Shown here in pieces: positions 4,102 through 56,346 of a stretch of DNA of 64,000 bases. The notes below the pieces were generated by a model. It had not been told where the DNA came from. It searched no databases and worked only from the letters and a program-made list of their open reading frames with translations. The stretch is taken from assembly GCF_001194135.2 (NCBI RefSeq), contig NC_068983.1:53466280-53530279 (forward strand). The letters run 5' to 3'. The DNA is from Octopus bimaculoides. Lineage: Eukaryota. Numbering within the stretch: position 1 is the stretch's first letter; every line of letters starts with the position of its first letter. The translations under genes and the position numbers were made by a program.

Positions 4102-4197
4102 ATATTTGCTGATTTGCGAAGAAATAAAATTCATATCATCATTGGAGATTTCTTTGACTATGCAGCTCGCTTAGTTATGTGTGAAGCATATCGACAG
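4102..4197 (+). CDS. VKR: Venus kinase receptor, internal exon A (VFT domain): IFADLRRNKIHIIIGDFFDYAARLVMCEAYRQ
   Basis: ttccag|ATA...CAG|gtattt, 96 nt, phase 0-0, open. Resembles the GABA-B/VKR VFT motif L(K/R)xxxxRIIxGxFxxxxARxVxCExY. Too short to appear in the ORF track. Confidence 0.88.
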
Positions 4198-5536
4198 GTA
4201 TTTGTTAAATTTTTGAATTTATTTCAAAATATTCCTAAGGTATATATTATCTCAATGCTATTCATAGATCACGTTACGTGTTTATAGAAGCTCTTTTTTA
4301 TTTAATCAATTGATGAATATATTTATTTAAAACTTAACTAACAACATTTATGAGCTTGACATCAAAGTGCAATTGACAAAGTTTAAGTATAAACAAGCAA
4401 GAAGAAAATATAAAATTCTGTTCTCTATGAATTTAATAAATTAGCTTTTTTTTTTATATATCAAATAAATCCTAGAAAAAGTTGGTGATAAATTTAGAAA
4501 CAATCTCTAATTTAAAGATAATAATCTTTTGTTGCTATTTAGACAGCAATAAATTCAGTTATATGCAGAACTTTTGTAGAATGTAATAAATTGAATTTGG
4601 ATAATCTGTTTCAGCTATTTGTGTTCTTTTGAGAACCATTGTTTCTTGAGATGAGTTTGTAGGCATTATATTATGAGTAGCTTATAGAATAAAGTACACG
4701 AATGACTATATGTTTGTGATAAAATTTTAATTAAAATTATCGATATTCTACATTTTGTGACTATGGTTAGTCCCTTTTGTTCTAAAATTTAACATATTCT
4801 TCCCAATAACTAGACAATTTAACTCAAAAGCTGTGAAGTTCTTTTATTCTCTGACCCAGAGAACAATGCTTTTAATGTTATATTTGCATTAATGGGCATT
4901 TTAACTTATGCATCTCATAAATATTCCTTCTTGTCAAAGGTATTGATGTATATATGTTTTGAGTTTGTTTAATAATGTCATCTTTACAATATTTTGTGTA
5001 GACTGCATTGTGTATATAATAATCCATTTTTTGGTATCATGTCACTTAGATAAGCAATGCCATGCTGGCATTTTTCGTTTGCTACTGCATGTGTTACCTC
5101 CATTCTAATTTCACAAAACTACTTCACACGATATGTTAGTCTAGAAATATCTCTATATTACCTGTTAAAAGAATAAACTAACAAACAATTTTCACTTCTT
5201 GTATTCAAACGATAACATAATTGTTCTTCTAACATGAAAACGTTTTTTTGTGCTTGTTGTTTACTGAACCTAGGTTACTGAATATGGATTAGAATTTAAA
5301 ATACAAGTGAATTGTTGAGAGAACTGGGTCTTGAATGTATTACTCAGTTTATTCATAAGATAATATTGATGGCATAGAAACATAAGGCTTATGAAAGTGA
5401 ATATTGGCATGCTAAGTAATTTCTAAGGTGGAAATAGGATTTTTTTAAATGCTAATAAGGAGATTTTTTTAAAAATCCAATTTGAAGCTGTGAGACCCAA
5501 AGTATGAAATAAAAGCGATAAAACAAAGCATATATA

Positions 5537-5940
5537 GGCGCAGGAGTGGCTGTGTGGTAAGTAGCTTGCTTATCAACCACATGGTTCCGAGTTCAGTCAC
5601 ACAGCGTGGCACCTTGGGCAAGTGTCTTCTGCTATAGCCTCCAGCCGACCAAAGCCTTGTGAGTGGATTTGGTAGACGGAAACTGAAAGAAGCCTGTCGT
5701 ATATATGTATATATATATGTGTGTTTGTATGTCTGTGTTTGTCCCCCTCCCCCCGCAACATCACTTGACAACCGATGCTGGTGTGTTTACGTCCCCATAA
5801 CTTAGTGGTTCGGCAAAAGAGACTGATAGAATAAGTACTAGATTTCCAAAGAATAAGTCCTGGGGTCGATTTGCTCGACTAAAGGCGGTGCTCCAGCATG
5901 GCTGCAGTCAAATGACTGAAACAAGTAAAAGAGTAAAGAG
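5537..5940 (+). mobile_element. tRNA-derived SINE, family A (near full length)
   Basis: tRNA-like head (GGCTGTGTGGTAAG...GGTTCCGAGTTCAGTC), body, internal (TA/TG)n and tail ...GCGGTGCTCCAGCATGGC.GCAGTCAAATGACTGAAACAAGTAAAAGAG. Many homologous copies in the window. Confidence 0.85.
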
Positions 5941-6148
5941 AGAGTATATAATGATGCATTGTAAATGTATCCCAGTCCATGCTGGTGTATAGGGACAGAT
6001 GTTGAAATGGTGTGTTACTAAAATTGGTACAATTGTATTCAGTTCATACATAAAAAGAAACCTTGTTATTAATTTATCTGTTTGTTGCTTTCATTTCTTA
6101 CTCTCTAGATGTGAAGCCAAGTTCTTATGAAATCATGTTACTTTTCAG

Positions 6149-6421
6149 AGGATGACATCATACGAAGGCTATGCCTGGTTTCTACCAGCTTGGCTTTCAG
6201 AAGACTGGTGGGATGTCGACTACTACAATAGTCCACCAGGACGGGATGACACTCGGCCACAGGAAGCAGTGCCTTGCTCAACAGAAGAAATGGAAGAAGC
6301 CGTCGAAGGTTACTTCATTTTGTCCAAGAGCTTTTATAATGATAATGGAAAGAAAAGCGTTGCAGGAGATATCACTGTGAATAAATTTAGATCAATATAT
6401 GCTGTCAAAGCTGGAAAAGCA
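6149..6421 (+). CDS. VKR: Venus kinase receptor, internal exon B (VFT domain): RMTSYEGYAWFLPAWLSEDWWDVDYY...VPCSTEEMEEAVEGYFILS...AVKAGKA
   Basis: ttttcag|AGG...GCA|gtaagc, 273 nt, phase 0-0; overlaps ORF 6152-6484. The YxWFxxxWxxxxWW...C(S/T)xxEMxxAxEG pattern is typical of GABA-B-type VFT modules. Confidence 0.92.
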
Positions 6422-8507
6422 GTAAGCAACAATCTTTTTTCACTTTTAATTCTTAATTTGAAAATTACACAACCTATTTTATAAATACTGTTTACATTTT
6501 AGTCTCTTTTCTTTGTTACTTTTAAAGCTGTCATGATGAATACTTAATGTGAATAGATCATAGATTACAGCTAATACAATGTCTTAAAATTTAGGAATCA
6601 GCTTATTTTTATTGATTATTTCTGGTTGTTAATTTTTTTGTTTTTATTATTGATTAGAAAACAAATTAACTGTGAATAGAATTCTCATTTTCTCAATGTG
6701 TGTGAATGTGTGTGTGTGCGTGTGTACCCTTGGTAATATAAGTGAGGAAACTAAGTAAGAACAAGACAATTATAGTTGATGCTCTACCTATGCCGTATTG
6801 ATAATTGAGGACAAAGAAAGCTGGAACGATCATTTTGCTATTAGGGAAACATTTGAAGTATGCTGATGATGAATAATGAAACATCATCTGGGTTTACTTT
6901 ATAATATATCATTAATTTACATAGTAGGGTGCTCTACATTCTCAATGGAAATATTTTATTTTTAGAATGTAATTATAGTTGGTACTATGTGTTCTGTTCT
7001 TACCTAAACTACACTAGAAAATAATTAGGTAAACAAGACGAAATTCTAACAAACAATCTTAGGGTTAACCTTACTGAATGTGGATCAGGTTTTGGCATAC
7101 ATATTACGGTTCATTATTATTTATATTTGTTTTGAAATCTCTCTTTTATTCCACTTCTCTCTAGTGCCTTATTCACCTCCTTTATTCTTTCATACTTTCT
7201 TTATCTTGCTGTCATTCAAAATATTCTGTAAACTAATTAAACATTTAAAAAGAAAATTCACAATTTCATCTGTTTACAATAATTACAGTTCTGTTTATAA
7301 TATTTAAAAGAAAACTTAAGGATTGATGCAGTAGCTTTTTCTGTGTTATTAGGATACTACAGTTTTATCTCACAAAGGGAAATCTCAGCTGCAATCATCG
7401 ATTAAACTTATCAATATTTCAAAGACTAATGCTCTACTTTTGGGACTACATTGTTGCTTTGTGTGATTTTTCATAAAAGCCCTATTACTTCTCAGATTGA
7501 ATTATATCAGTGCTTTTTTTCTCTATGTTGAATCTAAATTTAATTAGTAAACTACAAACCTCTTTCTTTTGAATAAAGCAAGACTTTGTTTCAAAGCTTA
7601 AGAAAACAGAAAACTATAAGTTGTATGTGTGTGTGTATGCATGTATGTGTGCATATGTGCATGTGTGTGTGTTTCCATACATGCCTGTGTATGTGGATGG
7701 GATTTTTCATGTAGAAGTGAAATGACTGAGATAGCAGTATATTGTGTAACCAGATCACCAATTTTAAGTTCATATCCACTTCAAGTATTGTGCCTCTTGG
7801 CAGTTATTTATTATACATGATCAAATAACAGGTTCCTTATTTTCCCTAGGTATTCTGGAAATATTTCCTGTGATGGTATAACATTATTATCCATTTCAGA
7901 TATTATCTCATTTATTTAATATTACTGAAAGCAAAATTAAACGTTCGTTTTATTAAATCCTACAGTTCACAGAAACTTTTATGATTATCCATTTACGTAC
8001 ATACATTGCCGCTTAAAATCTTACTTGAAGTTTAACTAAAACTAAACCTCAGTTATAACATTTAGACTTCATATAAATTCATTTTCTTCAAAGCTCCAAT
8101 TCCTCAACATCCTAGTTCAACTTTCATATTTCTCTCAAATTCTAAACATCTAATATTTTATTATTAATTATAGTTTTAAACATTTGCTTTATGTTAGTTT
8201 ATATTTTTACTAGTAAAAATCCTTTACCTTTAATACGAATCATTTTTGCTTTCCCCTATGACACTTCTACACATACATACAAAGAACACATCTATATTTA
8301 TGCATTGTATATCATAATGCCTATATTAATGTTTCACCAAATTCATCAACATCAGTTTATTTTCCTCATAACAAGTTATATTGTGCACATTATTATGATA
8401 GTTAAAACATTATTTGATTTTTCTTATGTTTCTGTTTAGTTTAAGTTCACTTTTAACTCTCTGTAGTCTTTGAGTATGAATTGCAAAAGAGTTGTTTGTT
8501 AATTGTT

Positions 8508-8556
<49 letters not shown>

Positions 8557-8664
8557 GTGTGTGTGTGTGCATACATATATATGTATATACACGCACATAT
8601 TCAATTTTTCAATGAAAGACATAGATTATTTAAGGAACATTTGATATTGAGCACTTTAATTTTA

Positions 8665-9030
8665 TCTTTCACTTATTTCAGTCATTAGATTGTGGCCATG
8701 CTGGGGCACTGCCTTGAAGAATTTTAGCTGAATGAATTGACCCTAGGACTTATTTTTTAAAGCCTGGTACTTTTTCTATCAGTATCTTTTGCTGAACCAC
8801 TGAGTTACAGGGAGATAAACACATCAATAATAGTTGTCAAGCAGTAGTGAGGTATAAACACGGACACACATATGAGGGACTTCTTTTAGTTTCCATCTGC
8901 CAAATCCACTCAAGGCTTTGGTCGACACAAAGCTATAGTAGAAGACACTTACCCAAGGTGCCACAGTGGGACTGAACTTGGACAATGTGGTTGGGAATAA
9001 AATTTACCACACAACCACACCTGCACCTAT
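8665..9030 (-). mobile_element. SINE family A copy
   Basis: Reverse-complement similarity to 5537-5940 along head, body and tail. Confidence 0.8.
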
Positions 9031-9744
9031 GATTAGACAGATTTCACAGCCTTAATTTATAGTCGATATCTTATAGTTTTCTAATAGTTAACCATATTAT
9101 TATTGTATCTATATTCTCAAATCATTACTCTATTCCTATAACCTCTAGCACTCCATATACTTCAGCTTTCTTTTATTTTCCTATACTGTGTCTTATTTAC
9201 CTGGCCAGTTATAATCTGAATGATTTTAACCCACATTAAGACAATATTCAGCTAAAACAGTATAACATACAGAAAGTATAATCTTATGGGTATCTGAATA
9301 ATTACATGTCAGTTATGTTCATACTGTTACATCTGTAGCTATATTCACAAACTAAAATCTCAATGTCGATAATTATATGTTTTGCTGATTATCATTATGT
9401 GCAACTGACTACTTTTGTGGTAATGTTAGTAATTATAATAATGTTGATTATTAATATACTGAATTTTTTTTTTAACAACTATAATATTTCTCCAGTGGAC
9501 ACAAAATAACACATTTGTAAGAAAGTATAGTCAATTAGTATTTTACAACATATTTTAACAACTCTAAGCATGTTGAAGACAAGTCAAACTTTGAGGAGAT
9601 TTAAAGCTAGAACATAGAAATATAAAACAATCTACTGAAATTATATACTTTGGTGTTCTAGTGTTTCTCTCACCACTCTACTCACACACACGTGCACACA
9701 CACACACACACATACATACACATATGTGTGTGTGTAATGTACAT

Positions 9745-10163
9745 AGGCACAGACAAAGCTATGTGGTAAGAATCTTCCTTCCCAAGCACATGGTTGTGGA
9801 TTCAGTTCCACTGTGTGACATCTTGAGTAAGTGTCTTTAACTGTAGCCTCAGGCCAACCAAAGCCTTATGAGTGGATTTCGTAGATGGAAACTGAGAGAA
9901 GCCCATCGTATATATATGTGCATGTGTGTTTTTGTGTGTGCTTGTCCTACTAACATCACGTGTTGACAACATGTGTTGGTTCGTTTATGTCACCATAACT
10001 TAGCAGTTTGACAAAAGAAGTTGATAGAATAAAATACCAGGCTGAAAAAATAAAAATGAGTACTTGGGTTGAATCATTTAACTAAAAAATCCTTCAAGGT
10101 GATGTTCCAGCTTGGCCACAGTTCAATGACTGAAACAAGTAAAAGATAGCAGAAAGATAAAAG
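9745..10163 (+). mobile_element. SINE family A copy
   Basis: Colinear similarity to 5537-5940. Confidence 0.8.
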
Positions 10164-10412: not shown

Positions 10413-10827
10413 ACTCTCTCTTTTACTCTTTTACTTGTTTCAGTCATTTGACTGCGGCCATGCTGGAGCACCACCTTTAGTCGAGCAAATCGACCCCAGG
10501 ACTTATTCTTTGGAAGCCTAGTACTTATTCTATCGGTCTCTTTTGCCGAACCACTAGGTTACGGGGACGTAAACACACCAGCATCAGTTGTCAAGCAATG
10601 TTGGGGGGACAAACACAGACACACAAACATATACACACACACACATATGTATATACATATATACGACAGGCTTCTTTCAGTTTCCGTCTACCAAATCCAC
10701 TCACAAGGCTTTGGTCAGCCCGAAGCTATAGTAGAAGACACTTGTCCAAGGTGCCACGCAGTGGGAATGAACCCAGAACCATATGGTTGGTAAGCAAGCT
10801 ACTTACCACTCAACCACTCCTGAGCCT
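10413..10827 (-). mobile_element. SINE family A copy (well preserved)
   Basis: High reverse-complement identity to 5537-5940; source of spurious ORF 10598-10837. Confidence 0.85.
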
Positions 10828-11400
10828 ACCTACATAACTTTACTACATAACTTTAAAGTTTTTCATAACCACACCATTTCATCAGGCAATATTGAGTTTT
10901 ACTACCCAAGGCTAAACATTTTTGAGGAAGGGGTATAGTTAATTAAATCAATCCTGCCATACAACTGGTTGTATTTTATTACTCATAAAAGGTGAAGATG
11001 CAAAACAGATTTCTGCAGGATATCATCAAGGGTCATAAAAGAACAGTAACTGAGTGTTGTAAATTATTTAGTCTAGTATCATTTCTGCTACTTCAAAACC
11101 CTTTTAATTAAGCAGTTTTTCAGCTAACCTGTTCATTACCACGTATTTCTCGAAATACATTGCCTTTGCTTCAATTAATTCTGTAAATGATGAAAACTTT
11201 AATAAAATTACTTTGTCACTGTGAAACTGATGGTCAGAGACTTCCATGTAAGTTTAAAATTTACATTGTTTTAGAGGAAGTTAAGTGGTCTTGCGAAGGA
11301 TACAAAGCAAATTTTTCATAGACCTGAACTTAAATAAACTAGATGGCTCTTGAACCTTAGTGCCAGAATAATAAAACAATGTTATTTATTATTTATCATA

Positions 11401-11765
11401 AGGTGCAGGCATGGCCTTGTGGTAAGAAGCTTGCTTCCCAACCACATGGTTCCTGGTTTAGTTCCACTGCATGGCACCTTGGGTAAGTGTCTTCTACTAT
11501 AGCCTCGGGCCAACCAAAGTTTTGTGAGTGGTTTTGGTTGATGGAAACTGGAAGAAGCCTATCATATATATATATATTTGTTTGTCCCACCACCATCACT
11601 TAACAACTGATGCTGGTGTGAACTAAGTGGTTCAGCAAAAGAGACTGATAGAATAAGTACTAGGCTTACAAAGATTAAATCCTGGGGTCAACTTGTTCGA
11701 CTAAAGGTGGTGCTCCAGCATGGTCACAGTCGAATAACTGAAACAAATACAAGAATAAAAGAATA
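11401..11765 (+). mobile_element. SINE family A copy
   Basis: Colinear similarity to 5537-5940. Confidence 0.82.
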
Positions 11766-12563: not shown

Positions 12564-12799
12564 CTTGTTTCGGTCATTGAACTGTGGCCATGCTGCATGG
12601 CGATAGTGTAACTGAAACAAGTAAAATATAAAAGAATTTCTAGTTGTGCAAATGAACTCCAGTACTTACTTTTTTAGACGCTTGGTATTTATTCTATCAG
12701 TTTATTTTGCCAAATCACTAAGTTACAAGGACATAAACACATCAGCACTCGTTGTCAAGCAATGGTAGGTAACAAACACAGACACAATGACACACACAC

Positions 12800-12839
<40 letters not shown>

Positions 12840-13257: not shown

Positions 13258-13297
<40 letters not shown>

Positions 13298-41631: not shown

Positions 41632-41699
<68 letters not shown>

Positions 41700-43187
41700 C
41701 AGCTTAGGTGGCAATTGCAAGAATAACCGTGTAGCTTTTATGATGCTTTCAGTAATTGTTTCAAGTGTCAATGTAGTGGTAAGAATACATAGTCAGCCTC
41801 TTGATGCACTCAAACTTTGGCCTGTTCAAACACTGAGGATGGTCTGCACTAACAGTTAGCTGATACTCATTTTCAGCTATGTACACTGGAACAATGTAAA
41901 ATGATGTGACATGCACAGGGGCAGAAATTGAACCCAGTACATTATGGTCATGAACCCGAATCTCTAACTACTAGGCCATTTACATTCATATTTGTGTGTG
42001 TGTGTTGGTGTACACACACACATAGAGTAATAACCACGAACTGAATGTATAATTTGGATATTACTACATGCATATCAGTATCAAATTTACACACATGATT
42101 AAGTATTTACATATATATGTGTGAGTGTATGCGCATATGTGTATGTATGTATATGTGTTTGTGTGTGTGTGTGTGTGTGCATGTATAAACAAAATGGGAA
42201 AGTACTCAATATTGAAATTAAAGTTGTATAATGTATAGGAAGCAGAAATTTCATAAATATTTATAACATCTTCTGAATATTGGCAATGATAATAAAGATT
42301 TACCAAGTTTCAACTTCCAATAATTATATTCACATAACCCATGAAAAAATTTAATTTTAAGCTAAGGAGTATATATATACTTGTCTCCCCCCCCCCACAC
42401 ACACACACGCACGTGTGTGTGTTTATGTGTAGATGTGTATTATTGGAAATTAAGCAGTATTGGAGTGTTTGCAAGCATGAACAGACTCATACTTCTGTTT
42501 AATTCTATCAGTGAAGAATTCGTGATGACACAGACATGAGAACATCAGTAAATGTGATCCTAAAGTGTTCAGGGAAGGGACCATCATGATGACATGGAGG
42601 AACTGACTGGCACCCAAGGCATCACCAGTAAACATTAGAACAGCTAAAATACAAGGCCCTTCTTGGTTGTGTAGCCCAGTGCAAAACCAGACATGAGTAT
42701 GCGTTTATGACTTTATATGACACAGCCTATAGGAAAGAAAGAGAGGCACTGGTGCAAGCAGATAGAGCATTGGCACTGCAAGCAAACAGTGGCCTGATGA
42801 AATGGAAACAGTTACTGAATGGGGTGTTCCCTAATAGGACATTTGGAAGTGGAAGCTAATATATTACTGGTACTTAGGTGCTGGCTTGGCTGTGTGGTTA
42901 AGGATTTCAGATTTCAACCCACTGCATAGCAACATGGGCTGTATTGGGCTGAAGGGTGCAACAGCAGGCTCAGTTTCTGTTTTGTTCTGTCAGAGAAGAA
43001 TTCATGATGATACAGGCATAAGTTTACCTGTTAAAGTGACACCAAAGTGCTCAGTGCTGGGACTACCACAGGGTAACCCCTAAACGTAAAATATCTTCTA
43101 CACTATTCTTGAGTCATCCAAAGCACTCTGTTTGAGACTTGCTTCACAGAAACTAAACAGGAACCATTGTACATGTGTGTGAATATG

Positions 43188-43599
43188 CAGGGCCAGATTA
43201 AGACCCATAGGGGCCCTAAGCACTTTAAAGGTTTTGGTGCTCCCATATATATGTAATTAAAAATATAAACAATAAATTATAAACCATAAAATAATTTTTT
43301 ATTTTTCAAAATACAACAAAACTAACAGTAAGATGAAAAATAATGTTTGTTTTTGTATATTTTCACTTTATTTATATTTGAAATATTTTCTCCTGCTTTT
43401 GATCAGATCCTCAAAATTAATCTTACATCACATATTTGCTTCTATATATAGCAGAGATAAAGTGTCCCAAGTATTATTTTAACAACTTTAAGGTGATTTC
43501 TTTTGTGTCGTAAACCATTTACCAGTTCTGTGATGCCCCCACTTCACTTAATGCCCTAAGCTTGTGCTTATTCTGCTTAATGGTTAATCCAATGCTCTG
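43188..43599. mobile_element. hAT-like MITE (degenerate)
   Basis: Left end CAGGGCCAGATTAAG; degenerate right end TTAATCCAATGCTCTG; internal GGGCCC/GCCCTAAGC subterminal motifs; no clear 8 bp TSD. Confidence 0.45.
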
Positions 43600-44754
43600 T
43601 ATATGTGTGTGTGTAGGTATGTGTTTGAGTATTTCTCTGTCTTCATATTGTCCCATATGGCAAACACTGTGACAGTCAGTGTTTATTCTGTCATAAACAA
43701 TCTGTCCCATAGCTCATGATTTCATCATATGATAAGTAGAATAAAAAAAAAAGTCCTTACTTGAAAATCAAGGTCTGCAACAGGAAGGGCATCTGACCAT
43801 TGAGCACTAACTCTTATCTAAGCCACACCAGCTTAGGAAAAATAAAAACAGAAATAAAAATGGTTGTGATGATAAAGATAACTCCAGACAAGAAGGAAAG
43901 GAAAGTGAATCTCAGCAGTATTTGTATTGAGAATGTAAAGAATTGTAACGAAATACTGCAGGGTATTTTGTCTGGTTCTCTACCTTTTCTCATCTGCAAC
44001 ACCATTTTTCATTATGATTAATAAATAATAATTCTATGTCATATTGTTATTGCCTTTAATTGCTTCAAACGTTGTCTATACCTATTAATATTTATTAAAC
44101 AATGATATAAAGGAAATTACAGCTGGCTATGTCTATTGTATATCAACTAAAGTGTCAAGGATTCATATTCCATCTCCAGTGAAGAAATATGTCCTTGCTG
44201 GTTCTCAACCTTTTCTAGCTCAATACCCGCTTTGACCTAATGGGGCTTTACAAAAGCCCTTCACCATGTTTTACCCCCCACCCCAAAGTAGATTATTTAA
44301 TCTAAGTGAAATTAATTTTACATAATTGTTTATTACCCATATGTTCTTATCCGACCACATCTAACATGTGCTATGTTTTAGATATTTGTGTGAACTAGCG
44401 CCACCTATAACAAATCTTAATGAAATTTTACTAAAGGTGTTGAAGGCTTATCCAACAAAATTATATTGGATCTTGGTGTATCAGTCACATTTTTGCTCAA
44501 TGTTCTACTCCTGTTTTAATCCCAACAAAGAGTTTTTGAAAATGTATTTAGAATATGAGCATTATATGGTTTAAATATTTTATTTCTGAAACAAAAATTA
44601 CAGCCCTTTTAAACACTCTGTTCCCTCTATATCACCCCTTAACATTTTCCCCTTCTTATCAGCTCATAATTACATCCAAAGGAGTGCTACAGCCCAAATT
44701 AAAAATCACCAAACTAGATGTGAGCAGATATTATGTCAAGAACACTCACTGACA

Positions 44755-44975
44755 GTAAGCCCCATGCCACTTAGGAAAGCACTCACGCCAGTGCCATGTA
44801 AAAAGCACCCAGTACTCTCTGTTAAGTGGTTGGCATTAGGAAGGACATCCTGCCTTAGAAACTATGCCAAAACAGACAATGGGGCCTGGGTAATTCTTCA
44901 GCTGGCCAACTCCTGCCAAACCATCCAACCCATGCCAGCATAGAGAACAGTTGATGGTGATGGCAATGATGATAT
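44755..44975 (+). mobile_element. Family B element copy (3' part)
   Basis: GTGCCATGTAAAAAGCACCC...GGTTGGCATTAGGAAGGACATCC...CCAACCCATGCCAGCAT. Confidence 0.72.
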
Positions 44976-45494
44976 ATGGAGTAGGTTAATTAGCAATCTC
45001 TCTTTTATCCCTTGTTAAATCACTATTAAACATTAACTCGTTAATTCTCTATTTCTTGATTAGTCCTGCTTGAACAAAACTAAGGTCTTTGGTCAAATAT
45101 TTTGGTGTGATCAACAGACCCAACAGTTGAGAGATTCCATGTTTTTGTCTTGTTTAGGACAACACTGCACACACTAACATTCAGTATTTGAATATGCCAA
45201 GTATTGTGTTTGGGGCATTTGCTTCTCGGCACAGTATGATCCAGTGTATCTGCAAGATTTTTAGGGAGGCCATAGCAGAAGCAGGCAAGCTGGAAATGCA
45301 CAGCGTGTTCCAAATGACTGGCATATAGGTACCAATGTAATGAATGCTAATTCAACATCCTAATAATAACAACTAAATTTCCTTTCAGTTACTTATTAAC
45401 ATCTCTAAAAGAGAACAAATGCTTTATGGGAATAAATTTTGGAGTTTTAACAGCTACTGTATGTGTTAGAGGATGTTACCAGAGACAGAATTTA

Positions 45495-45695
45495 TCCTTT
45501 TAGCATTAAAACCAGCCATTTTCTGGTCCTAATATTCTACTGGTTTTACATTCAAACGAGCCATGTCCTGCCTCTTATTCTAAAAATAAACAATCACATC
45601 ATCAAAATCTCGAAGCTTTGAGATAATGCATGGTTAATTCAAAACAATGAATAAATAAGCATTACATTTGACAGAATAATATGAATGCTAAAGAG
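45495..45695. mobile_element. piggyBac-type MITE just upstream of exon D
   Basis: Right end TGAATGCTAAAGAG-TTAA (TTAA at 45696-45699); degenerate left end TTTA-TCCTTTTAGCATTAAA. Confidence 0.55.
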
Positions 45696-45753
45696 TTAAA
45701 CAGTTTATTGTGTTTGCTCCTAAACAATTATTTTTATCATTAATATTTTTCAG

Positions 45754-46052
45754 TCAGCTAGTACAATACATCAATGAAACCAAATTTGATGGTGTATCTG
45801 GCCACATAAGTTTCCAAGGAGGTGAACGCATAGGTACAATTAACATTCTACAATATTTTCACAACGAAACCCGTCTCATTGGTCAATATATCCCAACTAT
45901 CCATAATAATCCTCGCATAAACATCCGTGGTAGTACACCTCCAGTAGCTTCAGGAAATGAAGAAATAGATAACGGAATTCTTCGGCTTTACAAGAGAAAG
46001 GTGCGCTGGCTCTCACCAAATGGGAAACCTCCTGCAGATGGTAGGCAAAATG
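45754..46052 (+). CDS. VKR: Venus kinase receptor, internal exon D (end of VFT): SQLVQYINETKFDGVSGHISFQGGERIG...RWLSPNGKPPADGRQN
   Basis: tttttcag|T...AATG|gttagt, 299 nt, phase 2-1 (alternative donor after 46040, G|gtaggc). Has the NxTxFxGVSGxxxF..G.R and W...G.PP.D motifs and two NET sequons; overlaps ORF 45710-46057. Confidence 0.9.
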
Positions 46053-46593
46053 GTTAGTTTTCATTTTCAACTATTCTTTATTATTATTATTATTGTTATT
46101 ATTATTATATGATCTTTAAATTCTTCCATTCTGTCAAGAAAGTGATTATAGAATCCTCATTTCTGATATTTAGATATGTGATGTTCCTGAACTAATGATG
46201 AAAAATTTTATTGGTCTATTGACTTCAATCTTTCTTCCTTTTTTTTCTTTTTTATTTAGTTTTGTTGTTGTTTGTTTTGTAAAATATGTCTGGTTTCAAT
46301 TCATCAAGCACAGTGTTATTGTACAACTTGTTTGCATCTGTAGTTAATGTTAATGCCGGAGCCCTCTGTGAAATGTATAGATTTGTCAGTTCAGTTTTAT
46401 CCCACTCACATATGTACATATAAATACATGTCACCTGATGACAGATTGAAATTAAAGATTTCCAAACATATTTTACAAAGAACAAAAAGAAAAAGAAAAC
46501 ATAAAAAAGATGAAACTAACTGTCAGAAGAACATTATCAACATTGCAAATATTAACTTGACCTAACAACTGAGGCATATAATTNNNNNNNNNN

Positions 46594-46629
<36 letters not shown>

Positions 46630-46631
<2 letters not shown>

Positions 46632-47300
46632 TAGACTACTCCTATTGAGCCAGGATATCATGATACTCATGCTAGAGGATGATTTATTTATAACTCAGCA
46701 TCACTTTAGTGACCGTGCAAATAACAATGGTTATCTTAAAATGAATCGATATACAATGTTTGTAAATACTATGTTCCGCTGAGTATACGGTATACCGAAT
46801 TAAGAGCTGATGATGAGTCTATGATTTATATATCTATCCCATTGCTGCCCTTTATTCATGGCAAATCATTGAACTATGGATAGAGCCATCCATCAACTTA
46901 TCTATAAATGGCTAACTTAAAATGCTTTGCGACTCATAAAGTAGAATGAGATCTTTAAATCAATGAGATTTTCATAAAAATATAGTACCAAGTTCATCCT
47001 CAAGTATAGGTAGGGGGTAGGCTCAGATAAGCTACTCCAGTGTATTTTTCTCGAGAGAGCACGGTATTGGAGAGATGACGTGTATATTAACCTAACTACC
47101 CACGACATCTTTGACGGAATATATCATGTTGATGAAGAGGAACAGTAACAATGACAGTAACAGTCGTTTGGACCAGAAAGTCTGATTAATTCTCTCGGGA
47201 AACATCGATAATAACTTTAACTCTATTAATTTGTCAGTGTATATATTAAATAGAGTGCAATTATTCCGAGATATATTTCAATATATGACGTTCTTGATGG
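46630..47300. repeat. Unclassified CpG-retaining insert next to (TA)n, possibly a Penelope-like terminal repeat
   Basis: Begins right after a (TA)n run and 10-N gap; more CpG and higher complexity than the flanks; no ORF. Confidence 0.3.
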
Positions 47301-48624
47301 TCATTTATTAATCTTTATATACACATGTGTGAGTATGTATGTATCTTGGGAGGGAGGGGGGAGAACCGTGTCCATGGATGTATTTGAAATTTTTGTGTGT
47401 GACTGTGAAGCTGGCAAGTCACTGTATCACTTTATTTTCTAAATGGATGTGACTTCTGAGACTACAATCATTTAAATTGATTACTTTTACTCCCCGTTAC
47501 TTGAAGTTTCTTCCTAGAGAGGCAATCATGAAAAAGATCTCATTCGTCCAAAACATATCCAGAGTTATCACTATGTCTCGCAAATGCCTCTTTATTTCAA
47601 TTAATCAGGACTCTTGTGCATCAACTCATTTTAACAATTTCCTGTTTGTTTTTTTAATTGTCAGTCTTGCCTTTGTTTGGCTTTCTTAAGCATTGTTCAA
47701 CAATATTTACCTCTTTCTTAATATTATTACCACCATCTCAGTTAATTAGTTACTGTACTTGCTACATTATCACTTAATTCAGTACATGTGATTTTTTTTT
47801 TTTTCCTAAGCTGTCAGCCTTGCCATTTTGGTGGGTTTCCTTAATCATTCTTCAAACGTATTTATCTCACGTTAATATCAGTATATTCCCAATTAATTAA
47901 AGTTATTGTATTTGTTACATTATCACTTGATTAAAATTCACACACACACACACACATATATAAACATGCCAATGTACATTTATATACGAACACACACTCC
48001 TGCATACATATATGTGTGCATGCATGCATGTATATATACCTGTTTGGGTGTGGGTTGTGTTATAAATGATAAGAGCATTGAGATTCTGTTTTAGAAATAC
48101 CATTTTATGCGTTTCTGATTCAATGTTTGGACATATACATATGCAAAAGTAGGGCTCTTTAAGAGACTAAATCAAATATAGTTTTGAAAACAGAGACAAA
48201 AATGATCAAGTTAAATAGTTCAGAGAATCCATACTGCTCTAATTATAACTTATATGATTTATATTTATGTAATATATTATGATATTTAACGACCATTTTG
48301 TTGCTGGGAGGTTTTTTTTTTGTCTTCCAAGTATCGACTCTGCTATCATAGGGAATTGCAAAATCTATGATCATACAATGTTTGTTTATTTTTCCCTCTA
48401 TAATCATGTCTGGTCTTCTTGTCTCAACAGTGTTACAGGGGTTACAGAGTATCTGAATGAATTATTGTGTCATCATCATAATGGGGGTGGATGGGAGAGC
48501 ACATCGATGAATACAATGAAGTGAGATAAGAGTTTGTGAGTTCCGTACATTGTATTAGAATCTTAGAATTAGTTTCCCTGGGGAGACCAAGTTTAGCTGT
48601 GTTAGATGAGTAGCCAAGCACAAC

Positions 48625-49100
48625 TCCCACTGCCTCCTCCTTTTCCTCTCTCCCTATTCCTCCAGCACAACCTCCTCTTCCACCCTTCCTCTTCTTCTTC
48701 CACCTCCACTCTTTCTCCTCCCCCCTCCAATTTCCCTCCTCTTCCACCTTCACCCTCTTCCTCCTCTCTTCACCTTTTGCTCCTCTAGTTCCCCTCCTCT
48801 ATTCCTCCTCTTCTCCACTATTCACCCTCTTCCACCTCTGCCTCCTCTCTTCTTTTCTGTCTCCCCTCTTCCACCTCCTCTGCTCCATTCTTCCTCTTCT
48901 GCTCCACTCTTCCTCTTTCACCTCCACTCTTCTTCCTCCTCTTCCCCCTCTCTCCCCCTTCTGCTCCTCTACTCCCCCTCCTCTATTCCCCCTTCTGCTC
49001 CACTATTCTCCCTCTTCCTCCTCTGCTCCACTTTTCCCCCAGCTGTCTCATCTCTTCCTCCTCCTCCACCGCCTCCACTCTTCCTCCTCCTCCTTATTCT
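48625..49100. repeat. ~480 bp polypyrimidine/polypurine tract (CCT/CTT-rich)
   Basis: Top strand is almost all C/T with recurring CTCCACTCTT and CCTCTTCC units. Confidence 0.92.
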
Positions 49101-49794
49101 TGCTGTTGCTGCAGATGCTTATCAATTCTGGACCAGCCCTGATCACACAGACTTATGAACAAAAGCATTTTAGACATGGTCTTCACATATTTCTTCAGTC
49201 ATTCTGTGCATAAGACTACATTATCTAGTGTGTTCCTCTCTTAAGATATTATTTTGAGGAAGATATAGCTGCTATTTCTACACCAGACCAAGTAACTACA
49301 TTAAGGGTCCCTCATTGACTCAATGGTATTTTTGAAACAGTATTTCAAGTGGTTAGAGAATTGAATTCTTATACAATAAGAGACATAAAATAAAAACAAC
49401 TAGTCAATATGGGGTATATTTACTGTGCCTGACATATTTGTTACAGAATACTTTGGTTGAGAAGTGATGGATTGGACAATTTGGAAGAATTAAAAGAATT
49501 CCACTTAACAAGAATCTCAGAACTATTTAGATGCAATTTATCAGAGTTAAGGACTTACAAACTATGCATTGTAAAACTATGCATTTCCTGTTTTCTTAGT
49601 TATGCATAATTGCCTTGATCTCTACTTCACAGAATATTGGTCTCTGTTTAAATGTTATTCATAGCAAACCTGAATCATATTGACGTGAATAATAAACTTA
49701 TTTGAACAAAAGCTTCATGTGGTAATTCAAAATCCACCAGAGAAATACTGCCCTCCTGATAGCATGAATTGAGAGAAACTGAGTGGCCGATGAC

Positions 49795-50180
49795 AGAACC
49801 CCCTGATTGGCACCCATGCCGGTGACACAAAATGCACCATTCTAGCGTGGTTGATGCCAGTGCTGCCTGACTGGTCCCGTGCCAGTGGCATGTAAAAAGC
49901 GCCACTCGAGCATGATCATTGCCAGTACCACCTGACTGGCTCCCAAGTTGGTGGCATGTAAAAAGTACCATTCAAGCATGGTTGTTGCCAGTACCACCTG
50001 GGTGGCACGTAAAAATCACCCACTACACTCTCGGAATGGTTGGCATTAGGAAGGGCATCCAGCTGTAGAAATTTTGCTAGATCAGATTGGAACCTGGTGC
50101 AGCCTTTTGGCTCACCAGCCCTCAATCAAACCATCCAACCCATGCCAGCATGGAAAGCAGATGGTAAACGACGACAATGA
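49795..50180 (+). mobile_element. Family B element copy
   Basis: Several GTGGCA(C/T)GTAAAAA units + RTE-like tail + (GAT)n. Confidence 0.8.
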
Positions 50181-51090
50181 TGATGATGAGTTATTATTTT
50201 TAGCAAGTCAAACAACCATGTAAGAGGCTGTCTTTTATTGGTTTAAAGTAAATATGGTTGTTGATATTGCCTAGCTCCAGATCACTCCTGATTAAACAGA
50301 ACAATGACGAAAGGCACTCCAGGCATGATTGACCCTTCTGTCATTGAACTACTTCTGAACTGCATTTATCCAATTCAACCATTTTGGATAAATGCAGTAG
50401 AATGAGATTTAAAGGAGATTTGGCTAGTATATCTAGTAGGTTGTGTGAGCATGTAAAAGCTTTCTTATTGAAAACCAAAGCCAGCTGACATACATTTGAG
50501 AAAATAGTCTTTGGTGGGACAAACAATGCTTTTCTCGCCCACAATGTCTATTTTACTCTCTTGCACTTTCTGTTTCATTCCTTCACAGAATTAATTATGT
50601 GAAAGGGAGAGTAAGAGGTAGTCTGAGGTATGAATTATTGGGTTGTCAGATAAATGTTTGTTTATTTGTTTGTTTCTGTTTGGCATTCCATCATCATGTG
50701 TCTGAAAATAAGGTAAAATTTATTCAGATTTCAAAAACAATAAACAAATGTTATAGAGGAAGATTAGATCTACAAAACAAAACCATAATTTTTTTTTAAA
50801 ATTTTAATTCAAATAACATTGAAAAGATTAAAATAAATGGAAAAAAAATATCATATCTATCTGACAAACCAATACTTAGTGATGTGATCTTTGAACGAGT
50901 AAGTGGCACTGTTTCAGTTGCATATATTGATATACTTATATTGTCTCAATTATAATAAGGACTATTTGGGAAAATGTATATTGTAGTCTTCCTTTAGAAT
51001 TGCTAATATATTGATTGCATTTGTCTTATCAGTGTTGAAACCACACAAATGGTTATTCTTTCTATCCTAAATTTCCATTTTTATTTCAAG

Positions 51091-51232
51091 AAAAAGTCAC
51101 TGAATGCCATATAGAGAAGTTTCGAGCTTTCTTGAATGTCAACTGTGAAATGGCTGTAATTCTTGCAAATGTCATGGCATTTGGTTTCTTTTCTATCATC
51201 ATATCCGTTGTTCTTATAATTATAAGACAAAG
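51091..51232 (+). CDS. VKR: Venus kinase receptor, internal exon E (stalk + single transmembrane helix): EKVTECHIEKFRAFLNVNCEMAVILANVMAFGFFSIIISVVLIIIRQ
   Basis: atttcaag|AA...AG|gtaagt, 142 nt, phase 1-2, matching the phases of both neighbours. About 25 hydrophobic residues (MAVILANVMAFGFFSIIISVVLIII) followed by basic residues. Missed by the ORF track. Confidence 0.88.
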
Positions 51233-52475
51233 GTAAGTCATTTTTGCATTGATAAATCACTACCTATCTATAACTTCTACATCTGTATTTATAAATTTTA
51301 TGTCTGTATGCACAAATAATGTCTGTGTGTATAAATTGTGTGTATGAAAGTTCAGATGTTTAATGGAATTATCTTGAAGAGTGATAATTACTGCTAATTA
51401 ATTAATTGCACCTGTGTAACTTTCCATCAAATAAATTCCTCTTGATTGACTGATTGGGAAACAAATAATCACTTTTTTTTTTTCAGTTTCTTTTTTGTTG
51501 TTTTTGTTTTTCTTTCATGTTATATTACAAACTTTTATGGGATATTCTACTTAGAACTATTATAAAACAATACTGTTTATTGAGATTTGATAAGTAAGAG
51601 TAATCAATTGTCCTTTTACTACTCAGAACAGTAATAGGATTGTTCAGGTATGTGACTGTTAGGAAAGAAGAAAGGTTTGGAGGCTGCAAGCAGAAACTGT
51701 AGGGAAGCTTAAGCCTTAGAGAATCAAATAGATAATGAGGAAACTCTAAATGAAAGATCTGTTTATGGTGTAAGGTTTTAGTTGTTTTTCACAAATTGGA
51801 AATAAGATTTTAACCAAATTTTCCAGAGCTGACAATTTATAACTGTTTTGATTTTATTTGTTTTGTTTTTTATTGCCTGAATATTTATTTATTACATTAA
51901 TACATTAGTCAATATCATTTTCTGAAAAAAAATCAATAGAAATGTGTATTGTCTCTAGTACTTATTAATAAAAATAAAATTGCTTAGACATGTTATGTGC
52001 TTGAATAATGAGAACTGAATGAATAACTGTGATGTGCCTGTATTGTAAGAGGAACAAACACAAAGCCAAGCAAAATTGGAAATTGTTAGAGCTGATCTAA
52101 AAGAATTGGTTTAATAACAGAAATGATGTGATAAAAGAAGGCAGAAAAAAAAATGTTCAGTTTGTATTTGTAAAGAAATAAATAAGAGTAAGCTAATAAT
52201 AGCATCAATAGAAGGGGTGTTTTGATGTTGATGTTATCAATGGTAGTTTTGTTCTCAGGAGAGATGTAAATGGTGACTGAAATCACAAAAATCTGTATTA
52301 CTTCACAGATTTCAAGAAACAAATTTACACAAGAAATAAACTTTCGTTTATCTTAACATTTAATTGAAATTCTCGTGTTAGTTTTAATTCATTAAATTGA
52401 TAAAGAAACCTAATACTATGTAAGAGGTTTTTTTTTTTTTCTAAATTTTTTTTTTTCTTATTTTCTTTTTCCCAG

Positions 52476-52719
52476 GTATTGCAGACGTAACAGAGGTTCG
52501 AACCAGAAAATGGAAGAACTCGGGTTATTATCTACTCGATTCTCCCGGTGCCTATCTCTTGATGGCTGGGAATTACCTCGAGATAATGTGGTATTAAACA
52601 GAAAACTAGGCGCAGGAGCATTTGGTACTGTGTTTGGAGGAGAGGCTTTCCTTGACGATCAAGGTTGGCAACCTGTGGCGGTAAAAACACTAAAAGTCGG
52701 ATCAACCATTGAACAAAAA
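52476..52719 (+). CDS. VKR: Venus kinase receptor, internal exon F (juxtamembrane + tyrosine kinase subdomains I-II)
   Basis: ttttcccag|G...AAA|gtaagt, 244 nt, phase 2-0. Encodes WELPRDNVVLNRKLGAGAFGTVFGGEA...VAVKTLK: Gly-rich loop and catalytic Lys of an insulin-receptor-like RTK; overlaps ORF 52510-52752. Confidence 0.95.
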
Positions 52720-52735
52720 GTAAGTCACAACTTAA

Positions 52736-56313: not shown

Positions 56314-56346
<33 letters not shown>

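What the first reader, a model, noticed from the sequence alone, without database searches (positions are those of the whole stretch)
4102..52719. Venus kinase receptor: GABA-B-like flytrap joined through one TM helix to a tyrosine kinase, in an apparently cephalopod genome
Seen: six exons with canonical GT-AG ends and matching phases (0-0, 0-0, 0-2, 2-1, 1-2, 2-0) give 1182 nt/394 codons reading VFT, then Cys-containing stalk, single TM, then GAGAFG/VAVK kinase N-lobe. Two of the exons (A and the TM exon E) are invisible in the ORF track, so an annotator could split this into a GABA-B fragment and a separate kinase. Established: VFT + insulin-receptor-like kinase defines VKRs, invertebrate RTKs first described in Schistosoma mansoni, activated by amino acids and linked to reproduction; in Aedes a VKR is the ovary ecdysteroidogenic hormone receptor. 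Inference: this is the octopus orthologue. The family is known, but I am not aware of functional work on a cephalopod member.
Basis: partly seen in the sequence, partly recalled or inferred. Interest (0 to 1): 0.75.

Follow-up and report, generated by a model that had tools for sequence, protein, structure and literature searches.

The report
Partial octopus Venus kinase receptor gene
The window holds the middle third of a Venus kinase receptor gene (a flytrap-type sensor joined through one membrane helix to an insulin-receptor-like tyrosine kinase) in an octopus-type genome; it is a real but ordinary new member of a receptor family already known in molluscs.

Summary
Six + strand exons (4102-4197, 6149-6421, 37480-37607, 45754-46052, 51091-51232, 52476-52719) have AG/GT ends and the stated phases. 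They splice into 1182 nt, or 394 stop-free codons. All three N gaps lie inside introns, and alignment to homologues is continuous across them.

The product aligns as one stretch to the published limpet receptor LgVKR (49.7% identity, E 4e-136) and to an ant protein named "venus kinase receptor". The flytrap half falls inside the VKR clade, apart from GABA-B-type 7TM receptors (100/100 bootstraps), and groups with molluscs (100/100). Its best fold matches are GABA-B ectodomains. There is a single hydrophobic helix. The kinase start (GAGAFGTV, VAVK) best matches the solved Schistosoma VKR2 kinase, then insulin receptor.

All six exon 3' ends coincide with LgVKR introns, and three also coincide with scallop introns. 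No 7TM exon is present. Repeat-derived ORFs in the window match only Octopus bimaculoides among named proteins.

Only about residues 573-943 of a roughly 1300-residue receptor are in the window. Lobe I and the catalytic core lie outside it. No transcript evidence could be obtained.

Verdict: a new member of a known kind, of low to moderate interest.

The parts
4102..4197 (+). Exon A (96 nt, phase 0-0), encoding IFADLRRNKIHIIIGDFFDYAARLVMCEAYRQ, part of the flytrap (VFT) module
   Evidence: AG/GT ends. tblastn hits from Pomacea, Patella and Ylistrum VKRs have E 2e-8 to 8e-8. The 3' end matches the LgVKR intron after residue 563, phase 0. The 5' end is not an intron in Lottia.
6149..6421 (+). 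Exon B (273 nt, phase 0-0), VFT. It contains the VKR signature GYAWFLPAWL at 6167-6196.
   Evidence: tblastn E 3e-29 to Pomacea VKR. The family motif is G-Y-(V/I)-W-F-L-P-x-W-L (PMC3703292). The 3' end matches the Lottia junction GRA|DVEESEF, phase 0, once the JGI model is re-read.
37480..37607 (+). Exon C (128 nt, phase 0-2), VFT helix carrying the invariant YDAVW
   Evidence: tblastn E 5e-9 to 2e-8. Y135, D136 and W139 are invariant in all 40 aligned sequences. The 3' end matches the LgVKR intron after residue 690, phase 2.
45754..46052 (+). Exon D (299 nt, phase 2-1): the end of the VFT (FDGVSG), a lineage-specific 20-22 residue loop at 45905-45970, and the conserved NGxxPxDG. An in-phase alternative donor lies at 46040.
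   Evidence: tblastn E 1e-17 to 8e-18. The loop has pLDDT below 50 in the model and is absent from the other molluscs. The 3' end matches the LgVKR intron after residue 769, phase 1, within a 2-residue alignment gap.
51091..51232 (+). Exon E (142 nt, phase 1-2): a stalk with two conserved cysteines (codons 51105-51107 and 51144-51146) and the transmembrane helix
   Evidence: tblastn E 1e-5 to 3e-5 to mollusc VKRs. C271 and C284 are at least 90% conserved. Both ends match the scallop introns, and the 3' end matches the Lottia intron after residue 815, phase 2.
51150..51224 (+). Single transmembrane segment MAVILANVMAFGFFSIIISVVLIII, followed by the basic stop-transfer sequence RQRYCRRNR
   Evidence: This is the only stretch with Kyte-Doolittle 19-residue hydropathy above 1.6 in the 394 aa. 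It is predicted as one continuous helix, residues 284-327.
52476..52719 (+). Exon F (244 nt, phase 2-0): juxtamembrane region and the start of the kinase N-lobe, with the glycine loop GAGAFGTV at 52609-52632 and the ATP-anchoring VAVK at 52675-52686
   Evidence: tblastn E 2e-26. Pfam PK_Tyr_Ser-Thr profile positions 2-43 are matched. The best solved kinase is 7zvs_A 'Venus kinase receptor 2', E 2.3e-8. Strands beta1-beta3 are predicted. The 3' end matches the LgVKR intron after residue 897, phase 0, and the scallop intron.
31189..31509 (.). Assembly gap inside intron B-C (6422-37479), abutting a (TA)n microsatellite
   Evidence: The protein alignment is continuous across the B/C junction.
41500..41599 (.). 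Assembly gap inside intron C-D (37608-45753)
   Evidence: The alignment is continuous across the C/D junction.
46584..46593 (.). Assembly gap inside intron D-E (46053-51090), 532 nt after exon D
   Evidence: The alignment is continuous across the D/E junction.

Best explanation
Positions 4102-52719 (+ strand) carry six consecutive internal exons of a Venus kinase receptor (VKR) gene in an octopus-type genome. They encode the second half of the extracellular Venus-flytrap module, a short two-cysteine stalk, the single transmembrane helix, the juxtamembrane segment and the first three beta strands of the tyrosine kinase. This corresponds to about residues 573-943 of a roughly 1300-residue receptor. 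The N-terminal domain, flytrap lobe I and the catalytic core of the kinase lie beyond both ends of the window.

By homology the receptor most likely works like other VKRs. A small ligand (amino acids, preferentially L-arginine, in schistosome and insect VKRs) or a peptide hormone (the neuroparsin OEH in Aedes) binds the flytrap of a receptor dimer. This triggers trans-autophosphorylation of an insulin-receptor-like kinase and signalling through PI3K/Akt/S6K and MAPK, with a probable role in gametogenesis or development.

Shown here: the architecture, family membership, exon structure and motif integrity within the window. Inferred only from other species: the ligand, kinase activity, signalling and reproductive role.
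For: Exon model:
- Canonical splice sites, matching phases and 394 stop-free codons.
- Exon GC is 0.41 against 0.34 for introns.

Architecture:
- Pfam ANF_receptor at 6e-18 plus the start of PK_Tyr_Ser-Thr in one product.
- One hydrophobic helix.

Homology:
- An exhaustive search gave 771 relatives. The best are full-length proteins of about 1300 aa matched over query residues 1-394 in one stretch: Patella vulgata (54% identity, E 4.5e-124) and Pomacea (53%), followed by a nemertean, a hemichordate, a tick, an ant, a scallop and a sea urchin.
- blastp gives one HSP to LgVKR (49.7%, E 4e-136) and one to 'venus kinase receptor [Lasius niger]' (40%, E 3e-93).
- LgVKR itself has ANF_receptor at 366-725 and a complete PK_Tyr_Ser-Thr domain at 855-1121.

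Phylogeny of the flytrap part: the VKR versus 7TM class-C split is recovered in 100/100 bootstraps, and window plus molluscs in 100/100.

Structure:
- AlphaFold model with mean pLDDT 84.9.
- The top 35 Foldseek hits are all GABA-B ectodomains, E 4e-15 to 3e-9.
- By sequence, the best solved flytrap is GABA-B R2 (8e-20) and the best solved kinase is SmVKR2 (7zvs, 2.3e-8), then insulin receptor.
- A homologue's full kinase best matches insulin and IGF1 receptor kinases at about 1e-79.

Motifs: GYAWFLPAWL, GAGAFGTV and VAVK match the family motifs of PMC3703292.

Intron positions: all six exon 3' ends coincide in position and phase with LgVKR introns. Three also coincide with Argopecten introns.

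No 7TM exon: class-C GPCR queries hit only exons A-D.

Taxon: SINE and transposon-derived ORFs match O. bimaculoides gene models at 62-94% identity.

Function in other species: PMC4522560 and PMC4026697.
Against: - Only about 30% of the gene is in the window. The catalytic loop (HRD), DFG, the YY autophosphorylation site and MAPE, and the lobe I ligand residues (S66, R107), could not be inspected, so an inactive or truncated receptor cannot be excluded.
- No transcript or junction-read evidence was available.
- No cephalopod VKR protein appeared in any of three database searches, although O. bimaculoides proteins are in the database. This could mean the gene is unannotated, but it also leaves expression unverified.
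- The glycine loop has Ala where 33 of 33 homologues have Glu (GAGAFG against GEGAFG).
- A largely conserved Tyr (position 130) is Phe here, as it also is in gastropod VKRs.
- The ligand and physiological role are extrapolated from flatworms and insects. No mollusc VKR has been studied functionally in the searched literature.
Confidence: 0.9

Rival explanations
1. There are two separate genes: a fragment of a GABA-B-type 7TM receptor (exons A-D) and an unrelated receptor tyrosine kinase (exons E-F) that merely lie next to each other.
For: Taken alone, the flytrap exons best match GABA-B receptors among solved structures. Annotation pipelines do split or misname this gene in other species: Argopecten P0028 is called 'ephrin type-A receptor 3-like' and holds only the TM and kinase parts, and Lytechinus has two separate models.
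Against: - Dozens of single proteins from molluscs to echinoderms align to residues 1-394 in one stretch.
- The flytrap part falls in the VKR clade, not with 7TM receptors, in 100/100 bootstraps.
- It carries the VKR-specific GYxWFLPxWL motif.
- The phases of D (ends in phase 1) and E (starts in phase 1) match, and the junction is the same as in LgVKR and the scallop gene.
- No 7tm_3-like exon is found anywhere in the window.
Confidence: 0.02
2. The locus is a VKR pseudogene or a partial duplicate that is no longer expressed or no longer encodes an active kinase.
For: Only a third of the gene is visible. No cephalopod VKR protein was found in public protein sets. There is an unusual Glu-to-Ala change in the glycine loop. 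The introns are very long and filled with repeats.
Against: - 394 codons carry no stop or frameshift in AT-rich DNA (chance about 2e-13).
- All splice sites are canonical.
- The nearly invariant family residues are retained, apart from Glu359 of the glycine loop, which is Ala here: Y135, D136, W139, F177, G179, G182, C271, C284, the glycine-loop glycines and K383.
- The x position of GxGxxG is not catalytically essential (established kinase knowledge).
- Long repeat-rich introns are the norm in this window.
Confidence: 0.06
3. It is a receptor guanylyl cyclase (ANF-receptor type: flytrap, one TM, kinase-homology domain, cyclase), as several database names of homologues suggest.
For: Homologues are named 'guanylate cyclase D-like', 'receptor-type guanylate cyclase gcy-5-like' and 'atrial natriuretic peptide receptor 2-like'. 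The Pfam family that matches the flytrap is called ANF_receptor.
Against: - Those same homologues have a full PK_Tyr_Ser-Thr domain and no Guanylate_cyc (PF00211) domain.
- True cyclases (Esox lucius, with PF00211) score only about 1e-24, against E 0 for VKRs, with the mollusc profile.
- The window's kinase start has an intact GxGxxGxV and VAVK, and its best solved match is a VKR kinase.
Confidence: 0.01

Closest known systems
LgVKR, the Venus kinase receptor of the limpet Lottia gigantea (JGI 109151 / LOTGIDRAFT_109151; Vanderstraete et al. 2013, PMC3703292)
   Same: The domain order is the same. Identity is 49.7% over all 394 residues in one alignment. The VFT motif, stalk cysteines, glycine loop and VAVK are shared. 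All six exon 3' boundaries fall at the same position and phase.
   Different: The Lottia gene is compact (about 9.2 kb for the annotated gene), whereas here six exons alone span 48.6 kb. The octopus copy has an extra intron before exon A and a loop insertion of about 20 residues (45905-45970). It also has Ala instead of Glu in the glycine loop. The rest of the octopus gene has not been seen.
SmVKR1/SmVKR2 of Schistosoma mansoni (founding members; the SmVKR2 kinase is solved as PDB 7zvs)
   Same: SmVKR2 is the best solved-structure match for the kinase start (E 2.3e-8). The architecture is the same. These receptors are activated through the flytrap (L-arginine for VKR1, calcium for VKR2) and are needed for gametogenesis.
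   Different: They are distant in sequence. Whether the octopus protein binds arginine cannot be judged, because lobe I (S66, R107) is outside the window.
AaeVKR of Aedes aegypti, receptor of ovary ecdysteroidogenic hormone (a neuroparsin)
   Same: Same family. It shows that a VKR flytrap can take a peptide hormone and drive Akt signalling for egg formation (PMC4522560).
   Different: According to that review, neuroparsins are known only from arthropods. No candidate peptide ligand is known for molluscs.
GABA-B receptor subunits 1 and 2 (class C GPCR ectodomains, e.g. PDB 4f11, 4mr7)
   Same: They are the closest solved fold and sequence for the flytrap half.
   Different: GABA-B receptors continue into a 7TM domain. 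Here the flytrap is followed by one TM helix and a tyrosine kinase, and no 7TM exon is present. The two form separate clades, at about 27-31% identity.
Insulin / IGF1 receptor tyrosine kinase domain
   Same: The kinase domain of VKR homologues is closest to the insulin and IGF1 receptor kinases (about 1e-79). The window's TM-to-kinase stretch also aligns to insulin receptor (5e-6).
   Different: The ectodomain is a flytrap, not the L1/CR/L2/FnIII ectodomain. Only about 45 kinase residues are available here.

Membership tests
Venus kinase receptor (VKR) | Extracellular Venus-flytrap (ANF_receptor / class-C-GPCR-like) module | tested here: met
   Pfam ANF_receptor 6.2e-18, profile positions 174-350 of 353. 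GABA-B ectodomains are the best sequence and fold matches. Only the C-terminal half of the module is in the window.
Venus kinase receptor (VKR) | VKR-typical flytrap motif G-Y-(V/I)-W-F-L-P-x-W-L (PMC3703292) | tested here: met
   GYAWFLPAWL at 6167-6196, with Ala at the V/I position, as in two other homologues.
Venus kinase receptor (VKR) | A single transmembrane helix linking the flytrap to the kinase | tested here: met
   There is one hydrophobic segment, residues 286-310, and no other above threshold. It is predicted as a continuous helix, 284-327. Exon phases and homologue alignments join it to both neighbours.
Venus kinase receptor (VKR) | Intracellular tyrosine kinase of insulin-receptor type: GxGxxGxV and VAxK | tested here: met
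   GAGAFGTV and VAVK are present. The best solved kinase is SmVKR2, then insulin receptor. Only subdomains I-II are in the window.
Venus kinase receptor (VKR) | Catalytic motifs HRD(L/V/I)xxRNxL, DFG, the YY autophosphorylation site and M(A/S)PE | not testable with these tools
   The exons encoding them lie beyond position 64000. No such exon was found in 52720-64000. The orthologues LgVKR, Pomacea and Patella have them.
Venus kinase receptor (VKR) | Amino-acid-binding residues of lobe I (S66, R107) | not testable with these tools
   Lobe I exons lie upstream of the window. Nothing was found in 1-4101.
Venus kinase receptor (VKR) | Pocket tyrosine Y406, conserved in all but lepidopteran VKRs | tested here: inconclusive
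   The paper's figure is not held, so the numbering could not be mapped. The only Tyr invariant in all 40 aligned sequences in this region, Y135 of YDAVW, is present. The mostly-Tyr position 130 is Phe here and in Lottia, Patella and Pomacea.
Venus kinase receptor (VKR) | Groups with known VKRs rather than with other flytrap receptors | tested here: met
   In the NJ tree of the flytrap part, the VKR versus 7TM bipartition is recovered 100/100 and window plus molluscs 100/100. The set includes LgVKR and Lasius 'venus kinase receptor'.
Venus kinase receptor (VKR) | Intron positions shared with other vkr genes | tested here: met
   Six of six exon 3' ends coincide with LgVKR introns. One requires re-reading the JGI splice choice, and one falls within a 2-residue gap. 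Three coincide with Argopecten introns.
Venus kinase receptor (VKR) | One transcript joining the flytrap, TM and kinase exons | not testable with these tools
   There is no cephalopod transcript resource. Exact look-ups of the exon B and exon F ORFs found nothing.
GABA-B receptor (class C GPCR) | Flytrap followed by a 7TM (7tm_3) domain | tested here: not met
   Eight 7tm_3-containing relatives hit only exons A-D. No 7TM-coding sequence is present in the window. The flytrap is followed by one TM helix and a kinase.
Receptor guanylyl cyclase (ANF receptor type) | Kinase-homology domain followed by a guanylate cyclase domain (PF00211) | tested here: inconclusive
   The C-terminus is outside the window. 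All close full-length homologues lack PF00211 and have a complete tyrosine kinase domain. True cyclases are far weaker hits.
Insulin receptor family | L1 / Cys-rich / L2 / fibronectin III ectodomain | tested here: not met
   The ectodomain exons encode an ANF_receptor flytrap. Only the kinase resembles that of the insulin receptor.

The most novel reading that the evidence does not exclude
The octopus VKR may be missing from current cephalopod gene sets: no cephalopod VKR appeared in three searches, although octopus proteomes are in the database. It might be the gonadal or neuroendocrine receptor through which a nutritional signal (arginine or other amino acids) or an as yet unknown peptide hormone, for example from the optic gland, controls egg formation in a semelparous cephalopod. 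Two candidates for altered ligand specificity are the cephalopod-specific loop of about 20 residues in the flytrap and Phe at the mostly-Tyr position 130 (a substitution also seen in gastropod VKRs).
Probability: 0.08. Interest if true: 0.6.

Novelty: new member of a known kind. Interest (0 to 1): 0.25.

Why it matters
VKRs are invertebrate-only receptor tyrosine kinases tied to gametogenesis in flatworms and insects. No mollusc member has been studied functionally in the searched literature, and no paper there links VKRs to cephalopods.

A verified exon model gives primers and junctions for cloning the octopus gene. It also allows a test of whether amino-acid or hormone sensing through a VKR takes part in octopus reproduction.

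On the practical side, annotators fragment or misname this gene in several species, as ephrin receptor, guanylate cyclase, ANP receptor or GABA-B subunit 2. A curated cephalopod entry would therefore be useful. The biology itself is expected from what is known in other molluscs.

Tried and rejected
- Donor 46040 for exon D gave 1170 nt. It was rejected in favour of 46052 because the conserved DG is kept and the total then matches 1182 nt.
- I looked for further exons with arthropod and then mollusc full-length VKRs. Nothing turned up in 1-4101 or 52720-64000. In the scallop the next kinase exon is 11.3 kb downstream, so its absence here is unremarkable.
- The first word-index homology search missed the closest relatives (Patella, Pomacea, Lottia), which the exhaustive and profile searches later found. 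Absence of a hit in that tool is therefore weak evidence.
- P0258, an O. bimaculoides kinase that surfaced in the repeat search, is an unrelated kinase with an inserted repeat-family-B-like segment, not the VKR.
- I tried exact look-ups of the exon B and exon F ORFs to find source contigs or transcripts. Neither is on record.
- The first bootstrap figures (17-34% for deep VKR nodes) were an artefact of comparing rooted clades. I recomputed them as bipartitions.
- I first mapped 'Y406' of the literature to position 130 (Phe). I withdrew this because LgVKR, which the paper counts as having the Tyr, also has Phe there. Y135 is the more likely equivalent.
- An intron hidden inside the exon D insertion was considered and rejected. 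The segment is only about 60 nt and lies in an open frame.
- tRNA and Rfam scans of the window found nothing.
- Two literature searches using min_terms were badly targeted and uninformative.

Full report
**1. Observation**

The window is AT-rich (about 34% G+C), repeat-laden eukaryotic DNA.

| Exon | Coordinates | Length (nt) |
|---|---|---|
| A | 4102-4197 | 96 |
| B | 6149-6421 | 273 |
| C | 37480-37607 | 128 |
| D | 45754-46052 | 299 |
| E | 51091-51232 | 142 |
| F | 52476-52719 | 244 |

Each follows a pyrimidine tract ending in AG and is followed by GT. The phases are 0-0, 0-0, 0-2, 2-1, 1-2 and 2-0. The sum is 1182 nt, or 394 codons with no stop. The chance of 394 stop-free codons at this composition is about 2e-13. 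Exons have 0.41 G+C against 0.34 for introns.

My first pass used a donor at 46040 and gave 1170 nt.

The three N runs lie in introns B-C, C-D and D-E. Alignments to Patella, Pomacea and Lottia proteins run through those three junctions with no missing residues. The gaps therefore affect only the intron lengths (31.1, 8.1 and 5.0 kb). That all exons keep the same order and strand across the gaps argues against mis-scaffolding.

Exon E has no ORF in the start-codon ORF list.

**2. What it encodes**

Pfam finds ANF_receptor (6e-18, profile positions 174-350 of 353) and the first 42 positions of PK_Tyr_Ser-Thr in the one product. A single segment, residues 286-310, is hydrophobic enough for a membrane helix. 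It is followed by RQRYCRRNR.

An AlphaFold model built on 40 sequences has mean pLDDT 84.9. It shows a flytrap-type alpha/beta half-domain, one long helix at 284-327, and three beta strands at 351-385. The only disordered stretches are 220-237 and 334-340. Its top 35 Foldseek matches in the PDB are all GABA-B receptor ectodomains.

By sequence, the best solved flytrap is GABA-B R2 (8e-20). The best solved kinase for residues 337-389 is 'Venus kinase receptor 2' of Schistosoma (7zvs, 2.3e-8), ahead of insulin receptor (5e-6). The complete kinase of a spider homologue is closest to the insulin and IGF1 receptor kinases, at about 1e-79.

**3. Relatives**

The word-index search returned 61 proteins. 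Most carried PF01094 and PF07714 together and covered 92-100% of the query.

The exhaustive search of 1.84 billion representatives returned 771 hits, 40 of them below 1e-30. The best were proteins of about 1300 aa matched over query residues 1-394 in one stretch. By name these are Patella vulgata (54% identity), Pomacea canaliculata (53%), a nemertean, a hemichordate, a tick, an ant cluster containing 'venus kinase receptor [Lasius niger]', the scallop Ylistrum, and Strongylocentrotus.

A profile search then recovered LOTGIDRAFT_109151, which is LgVKR in Table 1 of Vanderstraete et al. 2013. The model aligns to it in one HSP (49.7% identity, E 4e-136, LgVKR residues 532-897). LgVKR has a full flytrap and a full tyrosine kinase domain.

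In a neighbour-joining tree of the flytrap part, all VKR-type proteins including the window's separate from eight 7tm_3-bearing class-C receptors in 100/100 bootstraps. The window groups with the molluscs in 100/100.

The family motifs listed in that paper are present where the window allows a test: GY(V/I)WFLPxWL as GYAWFLPAWL, GxGxxGxV as GAGAFGTV, and VAxK as VAVK. The two stalk cysteines are at least 90% conserved.

**4. Independent check of the exon model**

I mapped LgVKR onto its genomic locus (L002). Its introns fall as follows:

| LgVKR residue | Phase | Window exon end | Window residue |
|---|---|---|---|
| 563 | 0 | A | 32 |
| 690 | 2 | C | 165 |
| 769 | 1 | D | 265 |
| 815 | 2 | E | 312 |
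| 897 | 0 | F | 394 |

The D/E site matches within a 2-residue alignment gap.

At the B/C site the JGI model uses a junction that drops five residues. The Lottia DNA offers GRA|GTAAGT ... TTTTAG|DVEESEF, which restores them and gives phase 0 at exactly the window's position.

In the scallop Argopecten irradians (L001), the TM exon and the first kinase exon have the same three boundaries and phases. The next kinase exon lies 11.3 kb further on. This explains why no further kinase exon is found in the 11.3 kb that remain after exon F.

The 5' edge of exon A is not an intron in Lottia. No upstream flytrap exon lies in 1-4101.

**5. Rivals**

- **Two separate genes.** A split into a GABA-B fragment plus a separate kinase is contradicted by the one-stretch alignments, the clade placement, the matching phases at D/E, the conserved D/E and E/F introns, and the absence of any 7TM-coding sequence.
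- **Receptor guanylyl cyclase.** This reading, suggested by several database names, is contradicted by the domain content of the close homologues and by the much weaker scores of true cyclases.
- **Pseudogene or partial copy.** This cannot be excluded from one third of a gene. However, the open frame, the canonical splice sites and the retained invariant residues speak against it.

**6. Source organism**

ORFs read from the interspersed repeats and transposon remnants of the window were searched as one concatenated query. Twelve of the named hits come from Octopus bimaculoides. These are stretches, mostly 51-94% identical, embedded in otherwise unrelated gene models. The remaining hits are generic mariner and reverse-transcriptase proteins.

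Together with the molluscan placement of the receptor, this supports an octopus-type genome. The species cannot be fixed with these tools.

**7. Mechanism**

By homology, VKRs act as dimers. Ligand binding in the flytrap cleft induces autophosphorylation of an insulin-receptor-like kinase and signalling through PI3K/Akt/S6K and MAPK. Known ligands are L-arginine and other amino acids (honeybee and SmVKR1), calcium (SmVKR2) and the neuroparsin OEH (Aedes). Knock-down impairs gametogenesis in S. mansoni and OEH-dependent egg formation in Aedes.

For the octopus gene, only the architecture and motif integrity are shown here. The ligand, activity and role are inference.

Lineage-specific features seen:
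- Ala for Glu in the glycine loop, where 33 of 33 homologues have Glu.
- Phe at position 130, where 31 of 34 homologues have Tyr. Gastropod VKRs also have Phe there.
- A low-confidence loop of about 20 residues absent from other molluscs.

**8. Novelty**

The family has been known in molluscs since 2013. In the searched open literature, no paper combines 'venus kinase' with 'cephalopod', and the single paper combining it with 'octopus' does so only in its reference list.

No cephalopod VKR protein surfaced in three database searches, although octopus proteomes are present. The gene may therefore be unannotated. The word-index tool is lossy and the exhaustive library is collapsed at 50% identity, so this is not proof.

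The finding is a sound annotation of a new member of a known kind. It is useful, but not surprising.

Noticed in passing
window 5535-5919(-), 8678-9029, 9763-10133(-), 10440-10840, 11419-11741(-), 12641-12826, 13260-13424, 20031-20376, 33480-33689, 35194-35287(-), 35815-35972(-), 36591-36760, 37956-38304, 39758-40108(-), 54033-54178: An interspersed SINE-like repeat of about 390 bp (family A) occurs at least 15 times, counting the reference copy, at 67-88% identity to that copy, on both strands, all in introns or flanks. Its pseudo-ORFs match segments embedded in unrelated Octopus bimaculoides gene models.
   Followed up: partly
window 15507-15645(-), 27430-27726, 44783-44889, 49808-50136, 53745-53919(-), 57740-58090: A second interspersed repeat of about 350 bp (family B) has an internal 66-bp tandem unit (57742-57969, 3.5 copies). 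A closely similar segment is inserted in an O. bimaculoides SRPK-like kinase model (P0258).
   Followed up: partly
window 62322-62675 (-): A 118-aa open stretch resembles a mariner/Tc1-type transposase. The matching proteins carry HTH_48 and Transposase_1 domains, at 40-51% identity. It is a decayed transposon remnant downstream of the receptor exons.
   Followed up: partly
window 26265-26810 (+): This looks like the tail of a non-LTR retrotransposon ORF. It has a zinc-finger-like CPHCxRRF...HLRTH motif, and the hits carry reverse-transcriptase domains. It lies inside intron B-C.
   Followed up: partly
window 30778-31188, 33458-33536, 38643-39164, 48600-49200: A (TA)n microsatellite of about 410 bp runs straight into the first assembly gap. 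There is also a perfect (AC)39 run, a 279-bp unit duplicated 1.9 times, and a pyrimidine-rich low-complexity block with a 72-bp repeat.
   Followed up: no
L001 (Argopecten irradians) 66654-69177: The intron after the second kinase exon of the scallop VKR-like gene holds a long array, with about 62-bp spacing, of units that each encode RGEPVLVIMEYHLHG. These are repeated copies of the end of that kinase exon. The annotated scallop model (P0028, 'ephrin type-A receptor 3-like') contains only the TM and kinase start plus unrelated terminal exons.
   Followed up: no
L002 (Lottia gigantea) 6255-6445; P0068 (Ylistrum balloti): Public VKR gene models contain probable splice errors. The Lottia JGI model drops five residues (GRADV) at the junction equivalent to B/C, although a canonical GTAAGT...TTTTAG pair restores them. 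The Ylistrum model skips the whole first kinase exon, the equivalent of exon F.
   Followed up: partly
window 52612-52614 (codon 359) and 37498-37500 (codon 130): The glycine loop reads GAGAFG where all 33 aligned homologues have GEGAFG. Position 130 is Phe where 31 of 34 have Tyr; Phe is also found there in Lottia, Patella and Pomacea.
   Followed up: partly
tool behaviour, versus 33 and 40: The word-index homology search did not return the closest relatives (Patella, Pomacea and Lottia, 50-54% identical), which the exhaustive and profile searches did find. Negative results from that tool should not be read as absence.
   Followed up: yes
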